A stretch of DNA of 64,000 bases from Auanema rhodensis (GCA_964057225.1 OZ059899.1:12276001-12340000), one strand, 5' to 3'; positions 3,001-56,971 are shown, counted from the first letter of the stretch. Notes: a model not told the origin generated them from the letters alone. Made by a program: numbers and translations.

Positions 3001-6000
3001 GGACTTTTGAACTTTAGAGTAATGCTATCGAAGCTTCCGCTAATCAACAGAATGCCGGAGAGGCTAAAGAATGGCGTTATAACGATAAAGATGGGCAACA
3101 ACAAGGACCATTTTCGTTCAATAAAGTCTTTTTATATAAAAAACATATAATCAGGATTTTTTCATTCAGATGAAAGAATTATATGCTGAAAAGGTCATTT
3201 TTGAAAAAACTGCTGTTTGGGCTTCTGGTATGGATAAATGGCAAACTCTAAGTAGTGTGCCCCAATTCAGATGGACAGCTTGTCTTCCACAGGTATTTGG
3301 TTATGCTGTTCGTTATCGTTATAAATAATTGCAGGGTGCTATTGGACTCTATAGATTCACCGAACTTTGCTCACTTTGCCTAGATATAATGATTAGAATG
3401 TGTGACTATTATCCTTCAAGGTTATATTCTTTTTCTTAGGCAGTATTCGTTTTTTATTTCCAGGGACTCGTATGGAAGCGTTGTTAGACCAATGCCAGGA
3501 GTAAAATTGCGTTTAACTGAACCGGTATTGCTTTACCATATAGTTCAACTTCTCTTAACTTATGAACCTTCAATTGTCAAAAGGGTCGCTACCCTTCTCC
3601 TTCATATTATTGAGGTAATCTTAGTATTTATATCATTTCAATACAAATTACTTTAAGGATAATCCATTCCTTCCTCGTTTACATCTAACTGGTGTTTTCT
3701 ACTTTATCTTAATGTACAATGGTTCGGATGTTTTACCTATTGCCAAGTTCTTGCATTATACCCATAGAAAACAAGCATTCCAATCTGCTATGGTAAACTT
3801 TTTTCATATAAGATCATATTAGGAATTTTGTTCAGTTTGGTGAAAGCCGTCAGTCTATTCTTTCTCCGCTACTCCCCGAGGCTGCTGTATTCTATCTGGA
3901 TCATTATGGACCAGATAAGTATTCTGAAGTGTATTTGGGAGAGTTTGACAACCCTGAAATCATCTGGAATACTGAGATGAGAAAACACATGATTCGTCAA
4001 ATCGCTATTCATATTGGTGATTTTTATCCCAGATTAACGTCTAATGTTAAGGTATTTTCTGAACTTCTGACATATCTATATGTTTTTTCCTCAGGCTTTA
4101 TATCAATTCTGCCCTATTCCTACCATTGATTATCCTGAACTTGAGAACGAATTGTTCTGTCATGTTTATTACTTACGTCATCTATGTGATAAACAAAGAT
4201 TTCCTGACTGGCCTATTAGAGATCCTGTACCTTTCCTTCGAGCATGTTTGGCCGCTTGGCATGGCGAGTTAGTGAAGAAGCCACCAGCAATGTCGATCGA
4301 ACAAGCTTGTGAAACTCTTGGTCTTTCCATGGCTGATGAAAGGTAATTGATTTGATTAAGAATGCAGATTAGCTCAACATATTTCAGTTGGCAAGATCGT
4401 TCTGTTGTTCGTAAAGCTTACTACAAACTTTCTATCTATTACCATCCTGATAAACTGACAGATGAGAATCGTGACAAGGAAATGGAATATAGAGATATGT
4501 TCGCAAAGGTTTGTATTCACACATCTTATGCTAATGGTATATTTGTTTAGGTTAATGCTGCTTATGAATTACTATCCAGCAACATCTCGAGAACTGCTCA
4601 AATGGCTGGTCCTGACACCCAGCGCATTGTTCTTTGTCTTCAAGCCCAAAGCATTATATACGGCAGATACAAAGAAGGTAAATTTATTTATATTTTTATA
4701 AGTTATGTTTTTTATGTTAGAATTATCTGTGTACAAATATGCTGGTTATGATCGTCTTATTCGCACTATTGAAATTGAAGCTAATGATGAATCCCTTTTC
4801 AAGAAGTCGTATGTTTTTGTTCTATTATTAAAATTTAATCAAGTAATTAATTTAAGGGGAGGTGGAATTTTGCTTTCTGCTGCTATTGAGCTCTGCAACC
4901 ATACCTTAATGAGTAGTTCGTTGAATGCTGAGCAGTTACGTCGAGATCAAGGTCTTGAAGCTCTGCAAACTGCTTTTGACAGATGCTATGCCATGGTTAC
5001 AATGAGTTCACAGCCTAATGATATTCCTGTTCAAGTATGTCCAAATCTTAAAGATAAAATTAAATTTTGTTTTTTTTAGGTCTGTGAACATATATGTAAC
5101 TGCTTCGCCACAGCTGCGCAATTTGAACAATGTCGCCAACGTTTGGCTGAACTTCCAACCTTATTTGGAAATATCTGTCATCTGTTGCAATTTGATGTAT
5201 GCTATTGATAACAGATCTAACATCAATTTTTTGTTCATTTAGCAATTACCCCGTCTATCTTCTGCTGCTGCTGAATGTATATGCAACATGGCCGTCGACA
5301 CACTTCTTCAAACTCAACTGTTCCAATCGGGAGTTTTATGGCAGTTGGTACCGCACCTCTTCCATTATGATTATACGTTGGACGAAGGAGGTTTGACTTA
5401 GAGTTTGAAAGTAAATAGTGATGCCGTCTTTAGGTGTTCAACATAGTGAATCTTCGAACAAGCAATCGTTGGCTAATCGTTTGGCAAGATCTTCATGCGA
5501 AGCATTAGCTTGTTTAGCTGGGTTTAGAGAAACAACGCCTGATAACGATGGAGTACAGGTAGTACAAGTTGTAAAATGAATCAGTTCGAATGAATGACTC
5601 TTTCAGAACAGTTTGAGAGCATTACTTACACCTTATGTTTGTCGCCTTATGAGAACTACTACCAACGATGCTGTACTGAAAGTATTGAATTGCAACACAG
5701 AAGATCCATATCTTATTTGGGATAATGCTACCAGAGCGGAAGTTCTTCAATTTGTTGAGCGTCATAGAACTTCGCATGAGCAATCGGTACAGTTCTAAGT
5801 TTTTTCTTTTCTCATTTTCTATTCATTGTAGAGTGAACTATTCGGAGCTGAATTCCAATTATCTGTATACGCTAAAGAACTGATTGTTGGTGATGTTTTC
5901 ATCAGAATTTACAATGAACAACCTAATTTCCCTCTTCATGTAAGCATTGTGTATCTGAATAATCTGTTCACATATTCTTTTAGGAGCCAAAGAAAATGGC

Positions 6001-8270
6001 GATGGATCTGTTAGATTTCATTGCTAAATATGTTGATGAACTTACTGGCAAAAAGAAAATGAATGGAGATTTGATTGATATTGACTGGAGCAGTAATGCC
6101 AATCAGATGTCTGCAAGCGACAAAGTTTTGATGTGCATCGAAGCCATCTGCAATCTTATTACTGCTAATCCAGGTATGTTGTTTTCTATTGATTGAATTT
6201 GAGTTTTTTTTTAATTTTCTACCGTTGTTTTATATAATATTTTAGCTAATATTGAAAAAAATGATAAGGGTAAGTTTGATGTAGTCTTGTGTTGTGAATG
6301 AGTTATATGTTATGAATTAAGCTTTTAGTTTTTGATTTCTTAAACAATCAAACATGTATACTTTTAAGGTGTGGAAATTCTGTTGATCGGACACTTTAAT
6401 CTTCTCATTTCTTATTTACGTGCTAAGACTTATCCAAAAATTCAAATTGGCGTTCTTAAGGTTTTTACTTATCTCTAATATATATTTTAATCTTTGAAAA
6501 TTCAGATTCTTTCTCTTGCTGCTGGTAATCGTGAATGTGTTTCTGATTTTGCGAATGTTCGACCATGTTCAACTTTGTTTGGTTTAATGATTGAAAGAAC
6601 TGACGGTGAAAGGAACATTTTATATTCACCGACAAGATTTTTTTTTCAGAACTCTCACTGATTTTGAACATTCTTATAGCTTTGGCATCAAATGGACAAA
6701 TTGTGAAAGATGTCCTCGATTACGGTATTTTTTATTTATTTTTCAAATCTAAAGTTTATCTTGCTCTATTCAGGTGGAGTTTTATATATATTGGCTGTTT
6801 TCTGTAGTTCACGGAAAGATCCTGCCTTGAGATTACAAGCCGCTGAAATTCTTGCCAAGCTTCAAGTAACAATGATATTTCAAATAATTTTATTTCAAGC
6901 TTTTTAGTCGGATAAACTGACTGGACCTCGTTGGAGCAGATTTATTACCAAGTACTTACCACCCATTTTCGCTGATGCTCTTCGCGATTCACCAACAACA
7001 GCGTAATTTTGATGATTCAATCTATAAGATTAAATTTTTTATTTCAGTATAAGCATGTTTGATTCATGTAATGAAAATCCTGAACTTATTTGGAATGATG
7101 ATACTCGTGCGAAGGTTCAAAGAATTTTGGAAGAAGGTATGAACGACATCTATACTAAGCAATGTAAGGATCCTGACACCAAGTGGAATGTGGTGAGTTC
7201 TTTTTATTATGAATACAGTCAATATATGTTTGTTTTATTCAGACGCTTTCTGATGACTCTTGTGCTTATTCGGAATCTGTATCAGGTGAACTTATCGTTG
7301 GAGGAGTATTTGTTCGGCTGTTTGTTGCCAATCCAGCTTGGACTGTTCGGCATCCAAGACAGTTTGCGACGGAACTTATCGAAAAGTATTTTTTGTTCAT
7401 ATTTTGTTTTCTATTATTGAGTATTCAGAGTTCTCGATTTGATGAAGAAACCGGGAGATGACTTATCTGTTGTAACTAAAGCGTTCACTGAACTCATGAG
7501 GTATCATCCAAACACAGCCGATCAATTGCCAGCCCAAGGATATCTACCACAATTTTGTACAGCTATGAGTTCTAAAGATCCGCGTACTTCTCAAGCAGCT
7601 ATTCTGATTCTTCAGCAACTTTCGGAGAATCAGGTATATTTGAAGTGTGATAGCATGATTTTGAAATCTTGTTTCAGCATTGTGCTGATGCTCTCTGCCG
7701 AATTAATTGTATTCAAGGAATCATGGTTTCTATGAAAAATCAACCAAGTTTGTGTATATATTTTGATTTTGTTAGCAAATCTATCTTCAGCTCTTATGAG
7801 AGAATCTTCACATGCTCTGAAATGCTTGATGAAACGAGGTAGTGGCGATCTTGCTGGCCAAATGCTTAACTGTGGAATGATTGAATATCTTCTTGATGTT
7901 CTGAAAGGATCTATGCCAGGTTTTTATTATTCTTAGTTTTCCCCATTTATGTTGTTCATTTAAAGGTGTGGAAAATGCTGCAGCTGCTAGAGCTGAGATT
8001 GTTGACGCATTGAAGAGTGCTTGTCTAGATCTGAAAGTCGGCGAAAAGATTTCAGCAATCCTGAATGCATCTCCAATCTGGTCCCAATACAAAGATCAAA
8101 GACATGACTTATTCCTTCCTGATGCTCGTATGCAGGCCATAACAGGTTTGTTTTTTGTTAATTGTCTGGCATATTAACAGTGTTTAGGAAATTCCACCGG
8201 CATCAGCGGATACTTAACTGAGGGTATGTTTAACCCGCCACCACTTCACTCACAGCCACCACCATTGTAA
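1..8270 (+). CDS. rme-8: RME-8/DNAJC13 endosomal J-domain protein, multi-exon, 5' part lies outside the window
   Basis: Spliced exons give IWN repeats ([36 protein letters not shown]), a GYF-like segment ([15 protein letters not shown]...WASGMDKW), a J domain ([15 protein letters not shown]...VNAAYELL) and the C-terminus [13 protein letters not shown]...[20 protein letters not shown]. Stop TAA at 8268-8270. Confidence 0.96.
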
Positions 8271-41311: not shown

Positions 41312-44300
41312 ATGGGAGTTTTGACATTAAATGTCATCTCCTCCGAGAGAGGATTGAAAAAAACAATGCAGTTCGACCCAACTATTCTTGTATTCGATGC
41401 CTGCAGACTTATTAGAGACAAACTGGGCCTTCAGAATACAGATCGTAAGTTTTTCTGATTTTTTCTCCTCCTTCAATAAGCCTTTGCCCGCTGTCATATA
41501 TGAATCACACTTTCGCAGTTAGCTATCTGGTATTCTGAAATGTTTCCCGAAGGACAATACATCAACTAGCGTGGCTGCTCCGCACTTATGCATAGTTTTA
41601 GTCCCTTGGGTCATTCTTCACGTCTTCGACTGGCGAAAGTATAAGCCCATAGTTGAACCTGCTCGAAGCTCTAATTGAGCTTTAGAAAATATGGAGAAGT
41701 AAAAATGCTAAGAAGGAAGGGGAACCATAGAAGTGAGAGAATGGCCGGGGGTTCTTCGAATCAATAGAAGAAACAGCATGCTCCTATAAGTAAAAGCATT
41801 ATAACTCAGTGTCCTAAACGAATAGATTAATTCTGTCCATATTTGGAGAATAAGAGGAACGGTCTCATAAAATGACAATGATGCGAGTCCTTGCGTGTAT
41901 GGAGATCATGTCACTGGCTTTGCATTTGAAAGCGTTAAAATTGAGGTCTGACATCAGCTAAAGAGCATGCTTCCAACAATTTTAGGGAGCGAGAATGGAT
42001 TGTCCCTAGAAAATGATGTTCATTCAAGATCCACATTCAGCCACTATTAGAGACTTAATGTATTTATCGATTTATAGCAATTTGATGAATATCTTAAATC
42101 TGCCCTCAATCATTGTCGTTGCTTTGGGTCCCGACTTCCTATAGAGCCGTGATTGCAGTAGATGAAATTGAATTGTCGGACTTGTACCCATAGAAACTGG
42201 CAGCAATTTGTGAACTACATGTGCAATTTGGCAGTTTGGACGTTAACCGTCTTCCTAACATAAAATTGGGGCGGAAGCAAGCTTTTTGAGATGACCATCT
42301 TTCTAATTTGAGCATACATAACATGTTACTTCCTAAAGTACTTATTAGAAATCAGTACCAAACGGGAAAAAATCAACTTACCTAAATGTATAAAATGTTA
42401 GAAATTCATGTTATCTATGTTTAAAAACTAAATATAGTTGGAAATATTGGCGATCGTGATACACCATGCACAACCGGTTAACTGATATTTCTCAATAAAA
42501 CGAAAATACAAAAACCCCGATTTGAGCTCAAATTATTCATTTCTCATCAATTGTGGTACAATTCGGTCTCATTCAAACCTCTATTCGAAAACATGGAAAA
42601 CTATATCTATGGTATATGTTTCAGCTAGTAAATATGGGCTATTTCGTGTGGAAGATGACATCACTAAAGGAGTATGGATGGACGGCGGGCGTACATTGGA
42701 ACATTATTTAGTTCGTAATCAAGTGAGCCGTGTAAAAAGCTATTTATTTTGAGATTTTTCTGTTTTAGGATCGTGTAGAATATAAAAGAAAGATCAGAGC
42801 ATTAAAAGTTAGAATGCTGGATGGAGCGGTAAAAACTGTCCCCGTAAATGAAAGTTTGCCAGTTGGACAGCTTATGCTCAGTATTTGTGGTAAAATTGGT
42901 ATTGCAAATCACGAAGAATACAGTTTGGTAAGAAATGTTTTATAGTTTTTTTGTATTCTGAATGTGTTAAGGTACGAGATGATGATGTACCAGGATCTGT
43001 TGTTAACCTTCGCGAAGAACGAATTAGAACTCAAGATGGTGATACCATGCCTAAACAGAAAGGTCCTTTAGGTCATATGATGGGAACACTCGGACGTAAG
43101 AAGGAACAGAAAGTTGAACAATTGAGGTTTACCGATATTCTGAACGTAATCATACTGCTATTTTTACAGACAAAAATTGCATACTGATGAAGAACTTGAT
43201 TGGGTTGAGCATACAAAAACATTACGTGAACAAGGAATTGAAGAAGATGAAACTTTACTGCTGCGGCGAAAATTCTTCTTCAGGTTAATAATATACCAGA
43301 TTATGATTTATTATTCATCATTTGTTGCTTTTTTTCCTGTGAAATACAGGATAGTTTACTCATCATTATAATAATCTTTTACTATAGTGACACCAATGTG
43401 GATTGTCGTGATCCGGTTCAATTACATTTGCTTTACGTACAATGCAGAGACGGAATTTTAAGGGTATATAATATTTTTTTTATCGAGTTCAACGTTTGTT
43501 TATAGGGTCTTCATCCAGTCACAAAAGAAACAGCTTGTGAACTTGGAGCTTTGCAATGCCAAATTGAATATGGAGATTTTCCTGAGAACAAGCCAAAGTT
43601 CTACGTAGAGTAAGTTATTCATATTAAATTGGTTGTTTTCTTTTTTCTTTTTTTTCTTTTCTTTTTTTTTGTGTAATGATGGAGTGAGATCAATGAGTCA
43701 ATCTACTATGAGTCAATCTACTCCGAAAGCTATTTTTTCAAGTTCAGTCTTGGTCCCCATTCCATTCCTCTGGTGGTTCTTTCCTGCTGTGCTAGTACTC
43801 GCCTCTATCGAGTTGCCAGTAGCAGCTTCTCGTATCTTCCTTCTTTCCCGAAAGCCCATTCGCTTATGCGCCCTCAATTGAGCAATTTGCGTGTTGAGTG
43901 CTTTTCGTTTTCCCCTCTTTCTTCTTTCTTCCCGCACACGCTGCCTAAATCATAAGCAGTCTACAACTTCAGTAATTCAGTTTTAGCTTAAGAGCATGGT
44001 AGAGATAAAAGAAAAGAATGAGAGGGGTGAGAAAGTTGAAAACGTAGAGAAGAAAGATGAACAAGAAATGAGCTAAAAGAAGTTTGGAAAGGAGAGACCT
44101 AGAAAAGACCGCAAGACGAGACAGAGCTATTGAAGCCTTACTGCCATCTACATAAAATGCTTTTTCCCTCTCTGTTTCTGTTTACTCTTTGGACACAGAA
44201 AATTACTATGTGCAGCTTCATGAAGTAGAATCGATATTGCCAGTTGGCCAGAGCCTTTTGCTTTTCTTTTTTTCTTTTCTTGCCATCTATCATTTTCAAC

Positions 44301-47300
44301 TCTCTTCATACCATAGGCTGTTTCTTCTGGTCCCCGAAGACTTGTGCTTGAAGCCCTGCCGTTTAGGCATTACCCAAAGCCACTTTGAAGCCCTCGATAT
44401 GCTGAAGATGATGATAATGTCGCAATGCTTCTCTATAGAACGTTTAATCTTCTCATTTCTTGAATTGTAGTCCTTTGAGTATTATATATAATCCTTTGGT
44501 TACCCAAAAATCTTTTTCCCCTATCTCACTTATTTTCCTTCTCTTATTTTATCTTTTTTCACTAACTCTTCTCTCTTTTCTCATTCATACATCTGAACTA
44601 CCTCTTCTCTCTCATTTTCTACTGTTTTATCTTTTCTCTTTCTTTCAAATACAGCCGCTTTGCGTGTGTATGTAATCGAGGGAAGCCAACCATCCTGTCC
44701 TACTAACCAGCAATAGGTGAACAGTGGATGCCTCGTTGAACCTTTATTGTATACGCACCACTGAATTAAAAACTGGCATACACCAGCAATCTTTTCCACC
44801 AGCATATTTGGAATAACTAGCTACTTACTAAAAAGCCCATCCTTTTCCTATTGTGCTAGTCATTCATCATATTGTGATCTTTATGAGTCCTGTCGGACTT
44901 CTACTAAGTCGCTATGCCAGCTACGACACATTAATTTTAATTTTTCAGCGGAAGAGATCTTCTTCCCAAAGAATATGGAAAAGATAAGGAAAATGAGAAA
45001 ACAATCGTCAGAGTAAGTTTTTATTTAAACTTATTTCTATTAATATAATAATCTAGAATTACAAAGAGTTGGTTGGAACCTCCGAATTGGAGGCCAAGAG
45101 CCGTTACGTGAGGTTATGCCGTGGTTTGAAAACCTATGGCGTTACTTTCTTTGTTGTCAGAGGTGAGTCCACATTTACAAATTCCTAGTATATTCGTTCA
45201 AAATTCGTGCAATTTATTATTTATTTCAGACAAGGTTCGAGGAAAGAACAAGCTTATTCCACGACTTCTTGGAGTGAATAAGGAATGTGTGATGTTGGTC
45301 GATGAAAAGACGAAGGATGTATTGAAAGAATGGCCCCTTGAACAAGTGAGAAGAACAGCTTGCTCACCTAAAACCTTCTCTATGGTTTGATTGACATTAT
45401 AATATTTTTGCAAAATATAAGTGTAGGATTTTGGTGATTATCAAGATCAATACTACTGTGTACAAACACCCGACGGAGAGAAGATCAAGCAGCTCATTGC
45501 TGGCTACATTGATATAATTTTACTCAAGAAGCGTACCGTTGATCACCTGGGTATTGAAGGAGATGAAGGTTCCACCATGTTGGAAGATGTTGTTGCACCA
45601 GCCAAAGCAACTTTGGTTAGTATTTACTTACCAGTTGTATTTATTTCGAGGCGGATTATCTGCTTGAAATTGTTCGAAAATTTCAACTTCTTATTCACAG
45701 GTTTCTCACGGACAAATTGGAAGTGGACAGCATGCTCAAGATGGACATGTTGCTCTTCGTGGGGTCCTTCGTACCCCACAAAGCGGGTATGGATATGGAA
45801 TCAACGGTGCTCAGTATGGAGCCGTTAGCGGTGAAGTTCAAGGAGGATCTGTTCAAAGAGTAAGTTTATGATTGAATACAAGAGTGTTTCTGCAAGCGAG
45901 CAACTCGGTCCCTAGTAACTCAGCATTAGAATTACACTCGATTTTACTACTCTCTCTCTCTGTCTTTCTCCTCCCGCTGTGTCATGCCCTGTCGTGCGTC
46001 CGGTTCCTTCTCCTATTGCCGGATTAAAAGAGGCCAACAGCGCTTGGTCTCTGGTTCAAGAGCTCTCTGACTAGAGAGGTGGCCGCTATTTGGATTCGAG
46101 GCTTGATGTCCTATTATAGGAAACAAGCTGAGCGCCATAAGAGACTAGGAGAAAGATGGAGTGAGTAGGGCTGATGACAGAGGGCAATGGCAGATGTCTC
46201 CGCCGGCTGCTGAATGAGTTATTATTGTTACCGAGGCAACGCTTTCATAGTCTTTGTCTACATTTTTGAATGTCTATCCTTGGTTAAAAACCCTTCATAA
46301 GGCTTGCTCTGTTTTCTCATCATTCCTTTTGAATAAAGAGTAGTATCGAATGAAAATATGATGGTGACTCTCGCGATCGTAGTATTCTTAGTAATGGTTA
46401 GGAGAAGTCTAGCTGCAACTTTTAGTAGTAGTAAGCATAAGGAATACTAGTGTCAGAGAAAAGCGAGAAAAAGCTAAGGAAGGAAACGGAAAGAGATAGA
46501 GGCAGACAGGATGAGAATAGAATTAAACTCGATGAGAATGAAAATGCCCGGAGGAAGATGAACTCCTGGAAATATTCTGTCACATCTTGTTCTCTGTGTC
46601 ATCAGTTACATTTAGGCTCAGCGTACTCGTATCATCGATACCTATGAACAACCACAACGTGCTCTTATTGGAACTATTGAAGCAACCATCCGTGCAGTTG
46701 ACGAGGCGGAAGAGGAATTGAAAAAAGAACCTCAAATTGATATCCCTCGGTTCCACGATGATCTCAATGCCAGAAGGTTAGGAGGACTTCTAAAAACAAC
46801 TAATTTCTTATTACTTAAGATGGATCGATGAGCAAGTTGCCGTTAATAAGGAGAGTGTAAATGAGCGTCTTGCTGCTATGGGTGCTGCTACTGCTCAAGT
46901 TGTACAATGGACCGCCGTACAAGAAGAGTACGATGAACGCGTTGGCTCTGCAATTGCAACTATTGGCTCCAACCTTCCTGATGTTGGTAGAAATGTTCGT
47001 GATTTGGCTGCTCTTATGGAAGAACGTAAAGGGTATATTTTGTTAAGACTTACCATTTCTCATTAGAAACAATTTCAGAGGAGACCTTCTTGAAGCTACT
47101 CGCAAATTATGTGGTGCTTTCGGTGATTTCCTCACCGCTGTCAACCCCGAACAGCAGGTAAATATATGAATCATTTGTATTATTTTATATTCACAAATAC
47201 ATTATTTTTCCGTCAACATTATTCTTTCGTTTTAGGAACGTCGTACAACTGTCCTAGCAGCTGCTGGACGCGTTGGTGACTTTTCTCAAACCGTCATCAA

Positions 47301-50300
47301 TACTATGGATGAACAGACTTATGAGGAACAGACATTCCAAGACAACCTTGTTCAGAAAGCTAAAAATGTTGCTACTAGCACTGCTAATCTAGTCCTACAG
47401 TACGTTGTTTTATTTTTCTTGATTGTAGTCTAAACTCAGTTGTTGAAGTCCTAAAATTGGCCTTGTGTATATCCTTCTGTTTTTAAAAGACAAAGCTGTA
47501 AAGCTTCGTGCTGTTACCGAAAATAGGCATATATGTCCTATGGGAGCTAGTTGTAGATTTAGTAAAGCTTCTGACCCTTGATGGATGCTATGTAAATGCG
47601 GTTGAAGTCGAGAGCAGTGTCTCTAGGGAAAGTAGGAGAAAGGGGTTCAAAGTTAGGGAAATGGAAATAGACAGCATAAGAAATAGGGGATTTAAAGAGA
47701 GGACCCGAGGGCAGATAGAGAATGGGGTATACATGCCACGCTTTAGAGAGCACGAGGCAAATAAGAGATACGAGCCGGGAGCGCTGAGATACAATAGGCT
47801 TACTAGAGGCTGAATGGACATCTGGTCATGCATCTCGTGGGCCTTCAATCGTCCGGGCCACACGTCTCTTGAGGCCATCCATTCAGTTCGATCGGCCTTG
47901 AGATTGTGCCAGCACCAAGGCATCCGTCTCCATCTCTGCCCTCTCTTGCACATGAAGCTGCTCTCCGCTTCTCTGATGTCTCTCTCCCTCCCCCATCTGT
48001 CCAGTTGCCCCTTTTCCCTCCATCGTCTCTAGAAGCCGCGGCAGCAGCTCAGTCCTGGGCGGTTAGCTCCTCCTCTACCCTCAGTGGGCGGTCCTCCATA
48101 TATAGTCATTCGAAGGCTGTGCCTCCAGCCTCCTATTCGTCCAAGCTGTTGGCTAGCTGACTGGCTGCTGCGCTTGGGACTGCACAACTGCTTGCTCACT
48201 TTCTCGTTTACGCGGCAGTCCTATAGTGTCTAGCCAACTCAGTATTATTTATTAAATGTTTTTATTTTTATAATATTTAATATTTAATAATGTTCACATG
48301 CTTTCTTTCGTATTGAAGTTTGTACTTCAAAGAACAATTCTTATCGCATTTATATGCTAAGTCTGAGAGCTATCCTATTGATTTATATTTCTCTTTATAT
48401 GGCTATGAAAGTTTTTTTCTTTTCTATCACCCTGATGAATATCCGCGCGCAACCAGATAGCCGGTTCTTAGTGAAGCGGCCATCACTGACTCCTTTAGTG
48501 GTACCTCCATCATAGGGTGGTTGTCGGCTTTTCTCTTTATCCCTTTTCGAAGAAAATGGAGAAGTGCTTGATAGTCATTCAGTCAGACCACCGTCAGCCA
48601 AGCCAGCCTGCAGATCCTCTGGGTCTTGCGTCTATCTCTTCCGTTGCTGGAGCAGAGTTTGAGCAGTTCAAGATTAGATCCGTACACTGGTCTACTGCTT
48701 GCTCTAATTATATGAAACGCTTGTAATTGACTCGCTATTCTACCATTGCCGTCCGTTCCTTAGCTTGTTAGCCGACCATTATTCTACATCTACGACTCAC
48801 AAACGCACTCCGGAGTTCTACTGAACTTGATCTTGCTGAAACTTAGAAATAGATTAGCTAAGCTCTATAGCAAACTAATCTATAGGAATCAAGATCATGT
48901 TTCCTAGACGACGAAAAGTAGTGACAGATATTCAGATATTCAACTACTATGGCAGCACGCCAGCACTTAGTGCCACTCCGCCGCCACCGACTCGTCGATT
49001 TTCGCCATTGCCGCCTCTGAATCTCACAATTCCGAAGAGGTACCTGCCTTAGATTGTAAGAGATAAAGGAGAATATGAGAGTGCGACATTAGCGAAACAC
49101 TACTGGATGTGAAGTAGAGTGAGTGAAGCGGAGAGCGAGGGAGCTAGAGAACACTATGAAAGAGACGAGGCAGTTGAAATAGGACAAGGAGCACGCCTAA
49201 CTTGGCCTGCTCCCATCTTTATGACGTCATCAAGCGTACTGCCTTGATATATTCTTTTGTCTGCGCTCGGTGATCCGTCTATCCGATTGTCTTTTCACTA
49301 GCCAGCTAGTCATGACCATTGTTCCATTTTCGATTTTTAACACATCAATGAGAAATAGAAAGAGGGCGTGGTTGCGCAACTATTCCTGGCTTTTAGTGAA
49401 AAGATGGAGCTAAACATGTTTCTATCAAATCAGAGATTAGAGTGATATTGAATCTTCTCTCGTTACTTATCTTGCCTGAATTTACTAATATGCTCTCCGA
49501 ACTGCATACTATTCTTATTTCAATTTATTTCCTTTTTTCCAGAGCCAAGACTATCTCTGCAGATTGTGAAGATCATGATCTCCGTGATAATGTCATCCAT
49601 AGTGCCACTCAATGTGCTTTTGCCACATCTCAACTTGTGGCTTGCGCCCGTGTTGTCGCTCCAACTATCGAAAGCAATGCATGTCAAGATCAGCTAACCA
49701 GTGCTGTAAAACAGGTATGTATAATTCTTTATACTTTGGTTCGAAAGCGAGGGAACTATTGGTCGATTTCAAAAATTTTGAATGTATTTTATGAAAACGA
49801 AATTGTCCTCTGATCGTTCACAGTTAGTTCTATGACTTTGCCGTTTTGTCTTTGTGAATGAGTGCGAGATGAAAAAGTACAGTAGTTTGGCGCTAGTTGC
49901 GATATTTGAAATGCAATGAGTTTGAATTCATTTAGGTTTCTCACACTGTCGATGAACTTTTGCATGATGCGGAAATTGCTTGTACAAGAACAAGAGGAAA
50001 TGGTGAACAAGCTTATGGAGATATCCATCAAGCTGCCCGTCAGGTTACTCAAGCTCTGGACAGTCTTTTGGATCATGTAAAGACTAGTCCTAAAATTACC
50101 AAAACTACTGAGGAAGAACAATACAATGCTGTTCTTCGAACCACTAATAGACTTCTTGCCCACCAGGTAACGATTGATATTATTATTTTTTATTTCTCAT
50201 GTCTCATATTCAGGGACCTAGTGAAGATCTCACTCGTGAAGCTAAGAAAGTCATTCGTCACAGTAAGATTTTGATGGAACAGTTCGAGCATGAGGCTCAT

Positions 50301-53300
50301 GAAAGACCTGAGCATAAGGAACGGCTTATGGATGCTGCTAGACGTGTAGCTACGGCTACAAGTAATATGATTGAGGCCACAAGGGTAAGCTATACGGTTC
50401 ATGTTGCTAATTGATATTAAATTTTATTAGGAATGTGAGTCCAGACCTTCTGAAGCAGAATCAGAAATTGCTTTACGTCGTGCAGCTGAACAAATGGCTA
50501 ATGTAACGAACGAAACAACTAGCGAAAGACAAGCTAAGCATATTATGGAGCGTCTAGAGCAAGCTGCTAAGCAGACAGCTTACGATGCCACTCAGACAAT
50601 TGCTGCCGCCAATGCTAGCAAGGTGTGTTTTTTGATTTTTCAAATGAAAAGCTTAAGTTTTATTATGCCAACATGTTTGCGAGCATAGCATCCTTATAGT
50701 TCGACGATAGTTTTTCTAAATGCATGATTTTCTATACATTTTCCTCATATTTTCATTGCTTATGTGCTATCGTCCGGCTATTTGGAGTGATATATCAAAA
50801 AATCAATTCTTACTATACAAACCTCGCATGCTCTCATCTCACTTCATATACAATCAATATAAAAAATCACATTAGACTAGTAAAAACGGTAGGCTGCTTC
50901 TGTTCAGGAAACTCGCAAACGAACGGAAACTACGGAGCAGCTTCTGGTTGATGACACGCACACCATCCTCCGTATTCGCTAAAAACCTCGCCTTGTCCTT
51001 GAATTATTCTGCTTTTTTATCTTTTTTTCCCTGCCTGTATTCTTTCCGTTTACTATAACGAGAATTCTTTAAAAGACTATTTCATCTTAAGTCAACAATC
51101 TAGGAACTTCTTACACCAGTGCTCGATTTCCGATTACTAGTTTCAGCTTGATATTTTCAAGTTTACATATCATTAAGCTCTGCTGTTTTTATTTTAACGT
51201 TATCTTTGTTCTTTTTTTTTAAAGTGACCTAAAACTTCAGCACTGAATTTTCGACACTGTCTATACATAGAAAAAGAGAAGTAACTATTCAAAAACAAAA
51301 TAATTGCGTATGTTTTCAAAACATCCATTAGTTTGACACGTTCACACGCAAAACTTCAGATTTTATTTTGTTTTAGAACTATAACAATGTAACATATTGT
51401 ATCTAGAAATAAACCATAATTTTTTCATTCATTTCTTTCCTTTTTTTCCTCTCCCTCTCAAGCATCTGGTCCTTATTTCCATCAAACTTGGCAGATTGAA
51501 CGTGAGTCGATGTGTGCCGTGCACTCCGGTTACCCATGGGAAGTAGCCTACCGAACTAACATCTGATTGAACAAATTTATATTCAAGCCTATCCTAACTC
51601 ATTATTTCAAGAAACTTGTGATTTATGCACCCTTAACACCTGAAAAATATTTAGCTTAACAAATTTGCTTTAGCTTTTTCTTTTCATTTTATTTTTTAAA
51701 GAATGAAATCATTTTTATATTTTCAGGAGTTGGTCAAGAGTAAGACCGTCATAGAGAATGTGGTATATGAATGTACGGAGACAGCTGAACATGTACCAAA
51801 GTACTGATATTTTTCATTCTTTCTATTACTCATGTTATCTGTTGCAGACTCATCACTTCTATCAGAGATTCTCAACAATCTTCAACTCCTAGCGATAAGT
51901 TCCGTGCACAGAGCAGACTTATTCGTGATTCTCACTATATCTTACAACCGGCAACAAGATTAGTAGAGTCTGCTCGAACTGCTGTAGCTCACATCTCGGA
52001 ACCTAATATTGCCGGCAATCTCCAGCAAACTAGCAATTCCCTTTCAACTACTCTTGCTGAACTTCGTACTGCTCTAAACTCAGCTCAACAACTGAACTTT
52101 AGTCAGCAGTTACAGTTTAGTGAAGAGTTGATCAAGGAATTGGATCAAGAGCTTGTAGATGCACAGAAGGCTGCCAAGGCTGGCTTACTGACTCCATCTC
52201 GTGGTTCTACTGCTCAAACATCAACATCTCACCTTATGGGTTCTGTACGTCAAGTTGGAAGCACCATCGCTCAACTTGTTAGTTCTGCTTCTGTTCAAGA
52301 CCAACAGCACCTCGGCGCTTCTGCGGTTGAAGCTGCCCAAAGTCTTCGATCATTCACAGGAAGTGTCACCGAAGTTGTTAGCACCCGTACTGATATCGAT
52401 CTTGACGAGTAAGTCTTGAATTGACCTTAAATGTTCAATATTTTTTTTTCTAGGTTCATTGTTCACTCAAGATCTGTTGTTCATGATTCTGGACGTGTCT
52501 TTGATCGTGTCCGCGAGAATGCAGCTGTACCGATTCTAAGTGAGTCAGCCAAGCAGGTCTCCACAAGTCTTCGTAAAGTCATTGCTTGTCTTCCTGACAA
52601 TCAAAGTGTTGATAAGGCAATTCAACAAATCCGAACGATAAACGTCAATCAGACAGTTCGTGTTCCTGATGTAAGGCAAGCTGCTTCTCAATTAGTTGAG
52701 TCAACCAGCCAGCTTCAAGCTAATATTCGCACAGCGGGTCAGAATGAATCTATCGATGTGTTTGTGAAAGCATACACAGATTTCCATACATCGGTTATTG
52801 CTGCTATCAAAACTCAACAAGTACCTGTCCAGCAAAGAGCTCAGCAGGTTGAAACATTGGAGCAATGTCGTGAAGAGGCTGTGTCTGTATTATCTCGAGC
52901 ATCTGCAGTGGCCAGTGATATCAGCCTTGCTCCATCACTTACTCAAGATATCAGACACTTCAGTGAAACTGTTAGCTCCATCGTGTCTCAAGTTAGTCAA
53001 GAGCAGTCTTGGCAAAACGAGTGTGAAGCTGCTCTCCGGCAAATTCAATCTGTTCGTCACTTGACCGAACAAGCTACACTACCAGTTAATGATAATAGTT
53101 ATTATGGTAGCTTGGACGCAGTTACTGAGCATTCTCGTCAACTCGGCGAAGCCATGACAGGAATTGCTCGTAACGCAAGAGCAGTGGATAGTAGATCTTT
53201 ATGTACTAGTGTTCGCTCTTCGGCGGACGCTGTTTGTGCTTTAGCAGAAGCTGCTTCCCAATCTGCATATCTTGTTGGTGTAGCTCATCCTAAGAGTGTC

Positions 53301-56300
53301 CGTGGCCAAACAGCTGCTATCGAAACTTCTCGTGTGCAAAGAAATTGCCAACAGGTTCGTCAGATCTGCCAAAGAATCGAAACCCAGGAATACAATCAAG
53401 AGCAAATTTTGGATGTAAGTTTGTATTACCTCCACACTTTAAGTTATTGTTTTTGTTTTCAGGATGCTACCGTGGTTGCTAAGCACACCTCTATGCTGGC
53501 AAACATGTGCCGTGAGGCTTCGGAGAGATCTACTAATGTGAATGTTAAGAAACATTTCATCAATAGTGCTCGTAACATCGCTAGCTACACCGCCAACTTG
53601 ATTACTGCTGTTCGAGATTTTGATGGCAAGAAGTCGCCTGAAACCCGTTCTACCTGTGCTTCTTCCGCATCCATGCTCTCGGAGGCTGTTGATCAACTTG
53701 AGAGATATGTGGACAATCCCGATTTTAATGCTGTTCCAGCTAAGATCAGTCACCCAGGAAGAGATGCTCAGATTCCCGTGCTCGCTTCAAGTCGTCAAAT
53801 GCTTGATGCCAGTTGCGAGATGATTAAGACAGCTAAGGATCTCTCTGTTGCTCCTCGTGACAGTGTAGTTTGGCAACGACTTGCTGACAACAGTAAAGAC
53901 GTTTCTGAATCTATCAAACGCCTTGTTTCGGCAATCAGAGATGCTGCTCCTGGACAAGCTGAAATGGATCGTGTTATTCAACAACTAGAACAACTTATTG
54001 TTGATATCGAGCGTAGTGCTTTAGAATCTATAGGATCGCCTTCCAGTTCGGTTTCTACAGGCGCTGAAAAACGTATTCATCAACAAATTCTTCATGCGAC
54101 CCAGAGTTTGTCCGAAAAAGTCGATACTTTAAGAACCGCTGCCATCAGTAAAGGAGAAGATTTGGCTCATTGTGTTGAAGAACATTGGCAGTTGACTCAG
54201 CCTTTGGCTGCAAGTGCTTGTGATGCTGCCGCTATTGCTGTTGACTCTCACCTCCAAGCTGAGTTGTTCGATAAATGCCGCACTGTGGTTGAAGCTGAGC
54301 TTCAAATGATGTATGCGTGCCGCGATTCTGGAGGAAATCCAAAGGCTGTTGAACACCATTCTCGTGTTGACGATTCTGCTGCCCAACTTCGAGATGCTTT
54401 GGCTGACATGCGATCTACAGTTCAGAAAGTTAGTTCCGATCAAGGAGTAATTCAAGGAATGATTGAAACCATCTCTCATTCGATCGCTAGCGCTGATCAA
54501 GCTAGAGCTCCTTCCCAAGGAAGCTTCGCTGATTTCCAGACCAAGATGACTCAATGTTTGGCGGACATTAGAAGAACTGCTTCAGATATGCCAATGGCAG
54601 AGCCACAAGCACTTGGAAGCTTAGCTCTTAATCTTTCTGAGCGTTATCGTGCCCTTGCCATCGAGTCCAACCAAGCCGTCGGCCTGTTATCCGCCGCCAA
54701 CCTTGCTCTCAAGCTTAAAGTTGCTGTCCAAAAATTGGGCACAGCATGCATTGAGGATGTGAAGATCGCAGGACAAAGACGCAGTCATCCATCAGATCAA
54801 AAGATTCAGCATGAATTAAACAGACAGTCTCAAGTTGTGATTGAGCGAGTAGATGAAGTTCTCGCAGCTCTTCATGAAGGATCAAAGGGAACACAAGCAT
54901 GCATTAATGCTGCTAATACTGTATCTGGAATTATCGGCGACCTTGACACCACAATATTATTCGCCACTAGTGGAAGCTTAAATCCAGCTGGAGAGCATAA
55001 AGATTTCAATGCTCACAGGGAAGCAATTCTAACTACTGCCCGCGCTCTTGTCGAAGATACTAAAGCGCTAGTTGCTGGAGCTGCCTCAAACCAAGAACAA
55101 CTTGCTGTTGCTGCTCAAAATGCAGTCAGAACCATCGTCAATCTTTCGGATGCGGTTAAGAATGGAGCCGTTTGCTTGTCCAGTGACAATGCTGAAGCTC
55201 AAGTTCTTGTCATTCATGCTGTTCGCGATGTTGCATCTGCCCTTTCCGCTCTCATTCAAGCCACGAAAAATGCTTCTGGAAGATCCCTTCAAGACCCTGC
55301 CATGGGTAATTTGAAAGAAGCAGCAAAAGTGATGGTTACTAACGTAACAAGCTTGTTAAAGACTGTGAAAAGCGTTGAAGACAAACAGCAGCAGGGTACT
55401 AGAGCCCTCGAGGCGGCTATTGAGAGCATTGGACAAGAGATCAAGCATTATGACCACGAAACGGCTGATGGTGCCCCAGGACCATCTGGCGCAACCCCAG
55501 AACACTTGGCTAGAGCCACGCAGAAGGTCACTGATGCTACCACAAGACTAGCTAGGGCTGCTCAATCACTGCAGCAATCGGACATCATAGCTGCGGCCAA
55601 TTTTGCCCGAGCGGCTGTCAGTGAGCTACTCATTGTTGCCCGAGCTGCCGCAGCAGACGCTGACTCCCCAGAAGCTCGCTATAGAACTTTAGACTCCGGA
55701 CGAGAAGTTGCAACTCAGGTTAGCTTTTCAAAGTTTAAAGTAAAAATAACATTTATATATTTAGGTTAGAGGACTGCTGGCTTCACTACACAATGTGCTT
55801 ACTCGTAACTCAGATCCTGCAGCCCGTCAACTGCTGCTGGATGCTTCTCGCGGAGTTGCACAGGCTGTCCGCGATCTCATCGGCTGTACGGAACTACTGA
55901 CTGGAGACAATTGGACTAATCAGACCGACCCTACTGTTGTAGCTGAGAATGAGTTGATGGGAGCCGCTAGTTCCATCGATGCTGCTGCCATTAAACTTGC
56001 TGAGCTGCGACCTCGAGTTGAACCTAAGGTTTGTTTTACATTTCTGGTTGTTTTAAATTTTTATATTCTAAATGAAAATAACTCTAACTTTGTTATGAGT
56101 TCCCTGCCCACACAAGGCCAGGTGAACTTTGATATGTCTGGTATTCTTGGGTTCGATAAGCAACCAGATTATTAGACATATCGAAGATCGCTGTGGCGCT
56201 AAGCATTGTCCAAAACTCAGCTATTTCTAGCAATCATGCGCTTGCTGGACAATATTTAAGTCAATTTGCGTGTCTCATTGTCCAAATCGTCCTAATCCTT

Positions 56301-56971
56301 ATCTAATTTCAGAAAGCTGACGAGAATCTGGCATTCGATGAGCAGATTTTGTCTGCAGCAAAATCGATCACATCTGCTGTTCAAACACTGGTCAAGGCTG
56401 CTTCTAACGCTCAAAGAGAATTGGTTGCCCAAGGTCGATTGGAATCCAGAACAAACGCTCATGCTGCGGATGATTATCAATGGTCTGATGGTTTAATTAG
56501 TGCTGCTCGCTACGTTGTAGCTGCTGTACATCAACTTTGTGAAGCTGCCAATGCTCTTGTACAAGGGCAAGCAGGAGAAGAAAAACTTATCTCAGCCGCT
56601 AAGCAGGTACGGTATTACGGCAATGAAATGCCTTTTTATGTTAACTGTTTTAGGTTGCTGCTTCAACCGCTCAGCTTCTGGTAGCTTGTAATGTTAAAGC
56701 TGACATGGAAAGTCAAGCTAAGAGACGTCTTCAAGCTGCTGGCCATGCTGTGAAAACAGCTACCGAACGTTTGGTACAAGCTGCTAGACAAACGGTAGTG
56801 GAAGACGAAAGAAATTTCGTAATTACGGATCGTATGGTCCATGGAATCGCTCAAGTCATGGATGCCCAGGAGCAGGTCCTCCGAAAGGAAGCTGAATTGC
56901 GAGCTGCTCGTCATCAGCTAGCCACTCTGAATCGAGCTAGATATGAACGAGAGGATTCTCCTAAGAACTAA
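41312..56971 (+). CDS. tln-1: Talin, full length; 27 exons assembled, 7623 nt, about 2540 aa
   Basis: F0 [23 protein letters not shown]; FERM motifs [28 protein letters not shown] and LKTYGVTFF; rod motif [29 protein letters not shown]; I/LWEQ domain [34 protein letters not shown]...[10 protein letters not shown]; dimerisation helix [18 protein letters not shown]. Exon phases add up consistently. Confidence 0.97.
48908..49039 (+). CDS. tln-1: Predicted in-frame cassette (or alternative first) exon of talin
   Basis: tttcctag acceptor at 48907 and AG/gtacct donor at 49040; 132 nt, phase 2 at both ends like the host intron; no stop codon. Confidence 0.5.
50908..50982 (+). CDS. tln-1: Predicted alternative terminal exon of talin (short isoform)
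   Basis: ttctgttcag acceptor in phase 0, matching the donor at 50622; encodes [24 protein letters not shown]-stop; AATAAA at 51408-51413. Confidence 0.65.
   Translation, partial: ETRKRTETTEQLLVDDTHTILRIR

What the first reader, a model, noticed from the sequence alone, without database searches (positions are those of the whole stretch)
47400..51726. Talin introns appear to encode an isoform switchboard in the mechanosensitive R2-R4 region
Most talin introns here are about 45-60 nt, but two large ones in the rod N-terminus (47400-49542 and 50623-51726) each contain GC-richer, coding-like islands whose splice sites match the reading phase of the host intron. These are two candidate terminal exons and one cassette or first exon, detailed separately below. 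Together they could produce head+R1, head+R1-R3, R2-insert and possibly headless talins from one gene. From established talin biology, R1-R3 carry vinculin- and RIAM-binding sites, while R4-R8, R13 and the dimerisation helix carry actin binding and dimerisation. These isoforms would therefore separate integrin activation from actin linkage. The coordinates and phases are seen in the sequence; the system-level reading is inference.
Basis: partly seen in the sequence, partly recalled or inferred. Interest (0 to 1): 0.8.

Follow-up and report, generated by a model that had tools for sequence, protein, structure and literature searches.

The report
Alternative start and end of talin
Two large introns of this worm's talin gene hold an internal start exon and an early end exon that are transcribed and conserved across nematodes, giving a headless and a tail-less talin; matching isoforms are already annotated in C. 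elegans, so this is real but largely known.

Summary
The window carries a nematode talin gene (41312-56965, + strand). Its closest relative among the loci fetched is Auanema sp. JU1783. The two large introns and their GC-richer islands are real.

- **Alternative first exon, 48576-49039.** It is not a cassette. ATG 48897 opens 48 new residues that splice at 49039 into exon 49543, giving a headless talin of about 1878 aa.
- **Alternative terminal exon, 50908 to about 51430.** It is spliced from 50622, adds 24 residues and a stop, and has AATAAA at 51408. The product is about 988 aa: head, R1-R3 and the first R4 helix.

Both coding pieces are conserved in Auanema, two strongylids and a Caenorhabditis, with changes mostly at third codon positions. 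The last 20 tail residues are identical to Caenorhabditis sp. 36.

Two proposed forms are not supported. No 47399>48908 junction was seen, so there is no evidence for the R2-insert cassette. The GC-rich island at 47450-48480 has no RNA and evolves as non-coding DNA, so it is probably regulatory and not a "head+R1" exon.

C. elegans tln-1 already has seven annotated isoforms, including a truncated form b and a published muscle-specific alternative 3' exon. This is therefore a new member of a known kind.

The scan noted both exons separately on this same window (s1-419714, s1-419715).

The parts
47236..47399 (+). Canonical talin exon ending in the phase-2 donor of large intron 1. It encodes most of the first helix of rod domain R2.
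   Evidence: Junctions 47157>47236 and 47399>49543 appear in all four RNA runs. Maps to human talin-1 up to K685.
47526..47598 (.). Conserved non-coding element near the 5' end of intron 1, enhancer-like. The invariant core is TGATGGATGCTATG(T/C)AAATG, with a CATATG upstream.
   Evidence: blastn hits at the same relative place in the O. ostertagi and O. dentatum introns. Four-species alignment A1. No RNA. The reading as transcription-factor sites is my inference.
47750..48160 (.). GC-rich conserved non-coding island (GC 0.53-0.60), probably regulatory for the internal promoter. It is not an exon in the available data.
   Evidence: GC. Identity to Auanema JU1783 is 0.74-0.92 against 0.28-0.45 for neutral intron. 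Mismatches are evenly spread over the three positions and indels are 2, 3 and 4 nt. Zero RNA depth. The checked RNA-like runs hold 0.00 of its words while DNA runs hold 1.00. The hairpin prediction is weak, z -2.6 and -1.2, and there is no Rfam match.
48576..49039 (+). Alternative first exon of a headless talin. The 5' UTR is 48576-48896 with one tiny uORF ATG at 48712. The CDS is 48897-49039 (48 new residues once the split last codon is completed by exon 49543), ending in the phase-2 donor gag|GTACCT.
   Evidence: Contigs of X1-X4 begin at 48576, 48585, 48625 and 48592 and run unbroken to 49025-49039. In X1-X3 they join 49543. There is one ATG in 321 nt of leader against 4.5 expected. The CDS is 95-99% identical to JU1783, with 4 of 5 changes at third positions. 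An orthologous ATG-to-donor exon exists in O. ostertagi, O. dentatum and Caenorhabditis sp. 36.
49543..49714 (+). Canonical exon whose acceptor is shared by the upstream canonical donor (47399) and the alternative first exon (49039). It starts with [10 protein letters not shown].
   Evidence: Both junctions are. Translation.
50431..50622 (+). Canonical exon ending in the phase-0 donor of large intron 2. It encodes the first helix of R4 and ends with AAANASK.
   Evidence: Junctions. Maps to about human S940.
50908..51430 (+). Alternative terminal exon. The acceptor is ttctgttcag|GAA. The CDS is 50908-50979 ([24 protein letters not shown]) with stop TAA at 50980. A conserved internal GT at 50947 could make a 39-nt cassette. 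The 3' UTR carries AATAAA at 51408-51413.
   Evidence: Junction 50622>50908 is in all four runs. X4 contig 18 runs from exon 46817 through every exon into 50908-51414. Contig ends lie at 51414, 51427 and 51454. The exon layout is conserved in four other species. The tail is identical over 20 residues to P0152 and P0155.
51450..51600 (.). Conserved non-coding element downstream of the intronic poly(A) site. Function unknown.
   Evidence: 0.77-0.78 identity to JU1783 with no codon periodicity. Only low-depth contigs lie on it (X2 51441-51652, X3 51407-51624).
51727..51800 (+). Next canonical exon ([15 protein letters not shown]...), reached by the full-length junction 50622>51727.
   Evidence: The junction is in X1-X3, and X4 has a matching loose end.

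Best explanation
The two large introns of this nematode talin gene carry the orthologues of isoform-making elements already annotated in C. elegans tln-1.

**Internal promoter and first exon.** Intron 1 holds an internal promoter with its own first exon (48576-49039). Transcripts start there, carry a roughly 320-nt leader almost free of ATGs, and begin translation at ATG 48897. They splice at 49039 into the normal acceptor at 49543. The product is a headless talin of about 1878 aa. It has a conserved 48-residue N-terminal peptide in place of the FERM head, the linker, R1 and most of the first R2 helix.

**Early terminal exon.** Intron 2 holds an alternative terminal exon (50908 to about 51430). 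When the donor at 50622 is spliced to 50908 and the intronic AATAAA at 51408 is used, the mRNA ends early. It encodes about 988 aa: head, linker, R1-R3 and the first R4 helix, plus an invariant 24-residue tail. [quoted passage not shown]

**Choice between forms.** The choice is set by promoter use at the first site and by competition between splicing and polyadenylation at the second.

**Shown:** the junctions, the transcript extents, and the coding-type conservation.

**Inferred:**
- the conserved GC-rich non-coding islands are the regulatory DNA of the internal promoter;
- the truncated form is a muscle-type talin that must link to actin through vinculin bound to R1-R3;
- the headless form is an actin-, vinculin- and IBS2-bearing rod that cannot activate integrins.
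For: - **RNA junctions.** Spliced contigs at 99% or higher identity from four runs of the same organism show 49039>49543 (3 runs) and 50622>50908 (4 runs), beside the canonical 47399>49543 and 50622>51727.
- **Transcript extents.** First-exon contigs start at 48576-48625 with no upstream junction or loose end. One 3357-nt contig joins upstream exons (from 46817) to the terminal exon and stops at 51414, just after the AATAAA.
- **Rough usage.** Contig depths give about 10-26% use of the internal start and about 22-50% use of the early end. The tool warns that depth is a poor measure.
- **Leader.** It has 1 ATG where 4.5 are expected.
- **Conservation against Auanema JU1783.** Alt-first CDS 0.95-0.99 and tail CDS 0.85-0.88, against canonical exons 0.75-0.86 and neutral intron 0.28-0.45. 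Changes are mostly at third positions, [1,0,4] and [0,0,5].
- **Orthologous first exons.** ATG, the RRKV...NYYG motif and a phase-2 donor occur in O. ostertagi, O. dentatum and Caenorhabditis sp. 36.
- **Orthologous terminal exons.** The same acceptor, a tail ending ILRIR-stop and a downstream poly(A) signal occur in all four.
- **Database proteins.** P0152 and P0155 end in the same 20 residues.
- **Literature.** C. elegans TLN-1 has 7 isoforms; only a and truncated b keep the N-terminus (PMC11642917; PMC13643791). [quoted passage not shown]
Against: - All RNA evidence comes from assembled contigs of one study. Contigs cannot fix true 5' ends, poly(A) tails, strand or abundance, and they drop rare forms.
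- No protein-level evidence exists here.
- I could not retrieve the C. elegans isoform sequences themselves. The equation with TLN-1b and the headless isoforms rests on a sister Caenorhabditis gene model (P0152, L003) and on descriptions in papers.
- The functional readings (vinculin dependence, regulatory role of the islands) are inference.
- AlphaFold2 gave only a low-confidence helix for the tail (pLDDT about 44-65), so the tail's role is open.
Confidence: 0.85

Rival explanations
1. The 48908-49039 piece is a 132-nt cassette exon that inserts 44 residues into R2 of full-length talin.
For: The acceptor tttcctag|A at 48907 is in phase, identical in Auanema JU1783, and the piece is a multiple of three.
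Against: No 47399>48908 junction appears in any of four runs. All contigs run unspliced through 48907 from about 330 nt upstream. The strongylid orthologous exons begin with the ATG at the start of the conserved peptide. The O. ostertagi gene model P0037 starts there.
Confidence: 0.07
2. The intronic transcripts are noise, for example retained intron, cryptic splicing or premature polyadenylation, with no protein function.
For: X1 contig 4 reads on from 50906 to 51754, so some unspliced RNA is present. The evidence is contigs only.
Against: Both coding pieces are more conserved than, or as conserved as, canonical exons. Their changes are mostly third-position, and the reading frames, ATG, stop and splice sites are kept from Auanema to strongylids and Caenorhabditis. 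Twenty of 20 tail residues are identical where the large rod exon is only about 52% identical between the window and Caenorhabditis proteins.
Confidence: 0.04
3. The GC-rich island 47500-48200 is a coding terminal exon, giving a head+R1 talin, or an independent nested gene.
For: It has open frames of 72-121 aa on both strands, high GC and 0.8-0.92 identity to JU1783.
Against: There is no RNA depth, and the checked RNA-like runs hold none of its words. Substitutions are evenly spread over the three positions and indels are 2, 3 and 4 nt. There is no Rfam match.
Confidence: 0.04

Closest known systems
C. elegans tln-1 (Y71G12B.11) isoforms a-g, in particular truncated TLN-1b and the muscle-specific alternative 3' exon (Warner et al. 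2019, PMC6581053; Amezquita et al. 2024, PMC11642917)
   Same: - The same gene, with mir-50 in a downstream intron as in C. elegans (PMC5499184).
- A head-containing truncated form made by an alternative 3' exon, and N-terminally truncated forms.
- A sister Caenorhabditis (sp. 36) has the same tail exon at the same intron position with an identical 20-residue end, and an orthologous internal first exon.
   Different: - A different genus: Auanema-like, with the large rod exon about 52% identical to Caenorhabditis proteins.
- The introns are larger (2143 and 1104 nt against about 590 and 715 nt in Caenorhabditis sp. 36).
- I could not read the C. elegans isoform sequences directly, so one-to-one assignment to isoforms c-g is not made.
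- Caenorhabditis gene models also start a 1589-1597-aa form inside intron 2 (P0010-P0012). No clear equivalent was seen here.
Mammalian Tln2 short isoforms from internal promoters in testis and kidney (Debrand et al. 2009, as cited in PMC3629562)
   Same: Headless talin rods are made by alternative promoter use inside the gene.
   Different: Different start points, and no sign of common origin. The nematode form has its own conserved N-terminal peptide. No vertebrate counterpart of the head+R1-R3 truncated form came up in what I read.
Composite internal/terminal exons decided by splicing versus polyadenylation (immunoglobulin mu secreted/membrane switch; from general knowledge)
   Same: One exon carries both an internal GT (50947, conserved CT(G/A)|GT(T/C)GATGA) and a downstream stop plus poly(A) signal. 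Full-length gene models of N. brasiliensis, C. angaria and C. auriculariae use the first 13 codons as a cassette. Two Mesorhabditis models use longer versions.
   Different: In this window only terminal use is seen in RNA. No 50946>51727 junction was found. Cassette use elsewhere rests on gene predictions.
Human TLN1 cassette exon 17b (from general knowledge; not checked in the library)
   Same: An in-frame optional coding piece in the talin rod.
   Different: That is a true cassette in R7. The piece here is a first exon, and no cassette junction was found.

Membership tests
Nematode truncated talin (TLN-1b type: alternative terminal exon with intronic polyadenylation) | A canonical donor is spliced to an exon inside the intron | tested here: met
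   Junction 50622>50908 with GT..AG ends in all four runs.
Nematode truncated talin (TLN-1b type: alternative terminal exon with intronic polyadenylation) | An in-frame stop, a poly(A) signal, and transcripts ending inside the intron | tested here: met
   TAA at 50980 and AATAAA at 51408-51413. Contigs end at 51414, 51427 and 51454. Poly(A) tails themselves cannot be seen in contigs.
Nematode truncated talin (TLN-1b type: alternative terminal exon with intronic polyadenylation) | The tail exon is orthologous to the Caenorhabditis one | tested here: met
   Same intron position. The tail [20 protein letters not shown] is identical to P0152 (Caenorhabditis sp. 36) and P0155. blastn gives 73-86% identity to L001-L003.
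Nematode truncated talin (TLN-1b type: alternative terminal exon with intronic polyadenylation) | Muscle-specific use (Warner et al. 2019) | not testable with these tools
   The runs are coded and held as contigs only, with no tissue information.
Headless talin from an internal promoter (C. elegans headless isoforms; mammalian Tln2 short forms) | Transcripts begin inside the gene and are not joined to upstream exons | tested here: met
   Four contigs begin at 48576-48625 with no upstream junction or loose end. Contigs cannot prove a capped 5' end.
Headless talin from an internal promoter (C. elegans headless isoforms; mammalian Tln2 short forms) | Own start codon in frame with the downstream canonical exons | tested here: met
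   ATG 48897, no stop up to 49039, and a phase-2 donor that matches exon 49543.
Headless talin from an internal promoter (C. elegans headless isoforms; mammalian Tln2 short forms) | The first-exon coding sequence is conserved in relatives | tested here: met
   JU1783 matches 47 of 48 residues. O. ostertagi, O. dentatum and Caenorhabditis sp. 36 have an ATG-to-donor exon with the shared motif.
Cassette exon in the talin rod | Junctions on both sides (47399>48908 and 49039>49543) | tested here: not met
   Only the downstream junction was found, and contigs read through 48907. Rare forms can be missed by contigs.
Composite internal/terminal exon | The internal 5' splice site is used in some transcripts of the same gene | tested here: inconclusive
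   The GT at 50947 is conserved, and cassette forms occur in gene models P0040, P0046, P0049, P0057 and P0058. No 50946>51727 junction appears in this organism's contigs.

The most novel reading that the evidence does not exclude
The two isoform-specific peptides are dedicated interaction modules, not just spacers. One is the invariant C-terminal tail ending [13 protein letters not shown]. The other is the N-terminal RRKV...I-x-I-(F/Y)-N-Y-Y-G peptide.

On this reading the tail turns head+R1-R3 talin into an integrin activator that does not bind actin directly and depends on vinculin. That could explain why vinculin is essential in nematode muscle. The headless form, and a possible 327-aa double-alternative mini-talin (partial R2, R3, the first R4 helix and the tail), would act as separate regulators of vinculin and RIAM-type partners.

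The tail exon would in addition be a three-way switch: skipped, a 13-residue cassette, or terminal.
Probability: 0.2. Interest if true: 0.6.

Novelty: new member of a known kind. Interest (0 to 1): 0.35.

Why it matters
Talin is the central force-bearing link between integrins and actin. Most structure-function work treats it as a single 2500-aa protein. This analysis shows that nematodes of the Rhabditina (Caenorhabditis, Auanema, strongylid parasites) keep two short forms. The isoform-specific coding pieces of both are at least as conserved as the canonical exons.

That argues the C. elegans isoforms listed in WormBase are functional and ancient. It also matters for practice: N-terminal tags and the ok1648 allele each touch only some isoforms (PMC11642917).

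The analysis gives precise, testable elements: the ILRIR tail, the NYYG peptide, and conserved intronic regulatory blocks. For this genome itself the result is mainly better annotation.

Tried and rejected
- **Tail exon as a diverged duplicate of the next canonical exon.** Ungapped BLOSUM62 scores against shuffles gave p = 0.04-0.35 in four species. Not significant, so dropped.
- **Conserved island 47806-47892 as a miRNA-like hairpin.** z-scores were -2.6 and -1.2 with large internal loops, against -6.7 for mir-50 in the same gene. There was no Rfam hit at E <= 1. Not supported.
- **AlphaFold2 of R2-R3, the first R4 helix and the tail (P0152:640-980, alignment A2).** The tail is a low-confidence continuation of the last helix with no fold-back. 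Uninformative for function.
- **A further headless start inside intron 2, as in Caenorhabditis models P0010-P0012.** The in-frame ATG at 51703 is not kept in JU1783. The frame before the strong GTGAGT at 51502 has no ATG. Left open.
- **Fetching N. brasiliensis and C. briggsae loci** failed; they are not on record.
- **Cluster look-up** added no names.
- **Phylogenetic limits.** Steinernema has no intron at either site. No tail exon was found in Thelazia.
Full report
**What is there**

tblastn with Haemonchus contortus talin (P0039) places a complete talin gene at 41312-56965 on the + strand. Rfam finds mir-50 at 56123-56191 in one of its 3' introns. That is the known position of mir-50 in C. 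elegans tln-1 (PMC5499184).

The nearest relative I could fetch is Auanema sp. JU1783 (protein P0043, locus L004), with exons 88-99% identical at protein level. The large rod exon is about 65-69% identical to strongylid proteins and about 52% to Caenorhabditis proteins.

**Check of the observation**

RNA-defined introns around the finding measure 46, 78, 2143, 221, 47, 46, 1104 and 47 nt. The two large introns, 47400-49542 and 50623-51726, are real outliers. GC reaches 0.53-0.60 at 47700-48200 and 0.44-0.49 at 48400-49300, against about 0.3 in ordinary intron.

**RNA evidence**

Four runs of one study, from the same organism as the DNA runs that hold this sequence, are stored as contigs. All six to fifteen contigs laid per run are at least 95% identical to the window, nearly all at 99% or more, and they are spliced, so they are RNA. 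They show the canonical junctions 47399>49543 and 50622>51727, and in addition:

- **49039>49543 in three runs.** The contigs start at 48576, 48585 and 48625, and a fourth run has a contig at 48592-49025. They run without interruption through the putative acceptor at 48907. There is no 47399>48908 junction and no loose upstream end.
- **50622>50908 in all four runs.** One 3357-nt contig runs from upstream exons (from 46817) through every exon of the region into 50908-51414. Other contigs stop at 51427 and 51454, just after the AATAAA at 51408-51413.

Summed contig depths are coherent: about 222+29 flowing into about 279, which then splits into about 61+197 in run X1. They suggest roughly 10-26% internal starts and 22-50% early ends, but the tool warns that depth is a poor measure.

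Nothing lies on 47548-48482 or 49044-49417. A second search shows that DNA runs hold all sampled words of 47450-48480, while the RNA-like runs of that study that were checked hold next to none.

**The alternative first exon (48576-49039)**

The leader 48576-48896 has one ATG, a 4-codon uORF at 48712, where composition predicts 4.5. ATG 48897 opens 48 new residues, and the donor gag|GTACCT at 49040 is in phase 2 like the canonical donor.

Against JU1783 the coding part is 95-99% identical, with 4 of 5 changes at third positions. Canonical exons score 0.75-0.86 and neutral intron 0.28-0.45.

The same exon exists in intron 1 of three more species:

| Species | Start of the exon peptide |
|---|---|
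| Ostertagia ostertagi (its gene model P0037 starts there) | MRRKVYKEIYIYNYYGS... |
| Oesophagostomum dentatum | MRRKVYTDVRIYNHYGT... |
| Caenorhabditis sp. 36 | ...VVSDVHVFHYYNGT... |

Each has a single ATG, a related motif and a phase-2 donor. This is therefore a conserved first exon, not a cassette. By JU1783 numbering the product is about 1878 aa.

**The alternative terminal exon (50908 to about 51430)**

After the acceptor ttctgttcag|GAA the frame reads [24 protein letters not shown], then TAA. The same layout is present in JU1783, O. ostertagi, O. dentatum and Caenorhabditis sp. 36: acceptor, tail ending ILRIR-stop, a GT right after the LL codons, and a poly(A) signal 160-430 nt after the stop, which is AATAAA in the window, JU1783 and both strongylids and only an AATGAA variant in Caenorhabditis sp. 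36. All five differences from JU1783 are at third positions.

Database proteins P0152 (980 aa, Caenorhabditis sp. 36) and P0155 end in the identical 20 residues.

Full-length gene models of N. brasiliensis, C. angaria and C. auriculariae include the first 13 codons as a cassette. Two Mesorhabditis models include longer versions, and Pristionchus-like proteins embed a related stretch. The exon may therefore be composite, usable as either an internal or a terminal exon. In this organism only terminal use is seen.

**Where the breaks fall in the protein**

Alignment to human talin-1 (6r9t) puts junction 1 at K685|A686 and junction 2 at about S940|T941. In an AlphaFold2 model of P0152:640-980, junction 1 lies six residues before the end of the first R2 helix. 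The tail continues the first R4 helix as a low-confidence helix.

- The truncated form is head, linker, R1, R2, R3, the first R4 helix and the tail.
- The headless form starts at the end of the first R2 helix.
- Neither break is at a domain border, contrary to the neat "R1 / R1-R3" reading.

**The GC-rich islands**

Blocks at 47500-47650, 47800-47950 (0.90-0.92 identity), 48000-48150, 49250-49450 and 51450-51600 are conserved with JU1783. Their substitutions are evenly spread over the three positions and their indels are not multiples of three. They have no RNA and no Rfam match.

One block, 47526-47598, is also kept in both strongylids, with the invariant core TGATGGATGCTATG(T/C)AAATG. I read these blocks as regulatory DNA for the internal promoter. 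That is inference. They are not the proposed head+R1 terminal exon.

**Comparison with what is known**

- C. elegans TLN-1 has seven annotated isoforms. Only a and a truncated b carry the N-terminus, and the ok1648 deletion hits a, c, d and e but not b and f (PMC11642917; PMC13643791).
- Warner et al. 2019 described an alternative 3' exon of tln-1, used almost exclusively in muscle, that removes most rod domains (PMC6581053).
- Mammalian Tln2 makes short headless forms from internal promoters in testis and kidney (PMC3629562).
[quoted passage not shown] This supports the inference that a tail-less talin could work through vinculin bound to R1-R3.

**Verdict**

The phenomenon is a known feature of nematode talin, documented here in a further genus.

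What I did not find described in the papers I read is the depth of conservation of the two isoform-specific peptides and the possible composite nature of the tail exon.

Noticed in passing
window 56123-56191 (+): A mir-50 precursor (Rfam RF00824, 67.5 bits; fold z-score -6.7) sits in a 3' intron of the talin gene. This is the same host-gene arrangement as in C. elegans.
   Followed up: partly
window 47526-47598; L001 725-795; L002 8435-8508; L004 about 6710-6790: A non-coding element near the 5' end of talin intron 1 is conserved from Auanema to strongylids. Its invariant core is TGATGGATGCTATG(T/C)AAATG, which to my eye resembles a Pbx/Hox site next to an octamer site. There is no RNA over it.
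   Followed up: partly
window 47800-47950: A 150-nt block is 90-92% identical to Auanema JU1783, more conserved than the coding exons. It has a palindromic GAATGGA...TCCATTC frame. It is not codon-like, has no RNA, and gives only a weak hairpin prediction. Unexplained.
   Followed up: partly
L003 14403-20850 and proteins P0010-P0012, P0009, P0034: Caenorhabditis gene models start 1589-1758-aa headless talins inside the intron equivalent to 50623-51726. Pristionchus-like proteins carry a roughly 230-residue N-terminal extension containing a relative of the tail exon (EQLLVDEEHT). Use of this intron seems to differ between genera.
   Followed up: partly
window 41450-42617, 43611-44940, 45860-46615: Three more talin introns in the head and linker region are large (about 0.75-1.3 kb) compared with the usual 45-80 nt. 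I did not examine them for further alternative exons.
   Followed up: no
window 49715-49935: This 221-nt intron is the least conserved stretch against JU1783 (0.28-0.32). Run X3 shows roughly doubled depth around 49605-49791, which may reflect some retained intron.
   Followed up: no
L005 (Steinernema hermaphroditum) 3854-5146: Steinernema talin has no intron at either of the two positions and no tail exon. The isoform-making introns may therefore be limited to a subset of nematodes.
   Followed up: partly
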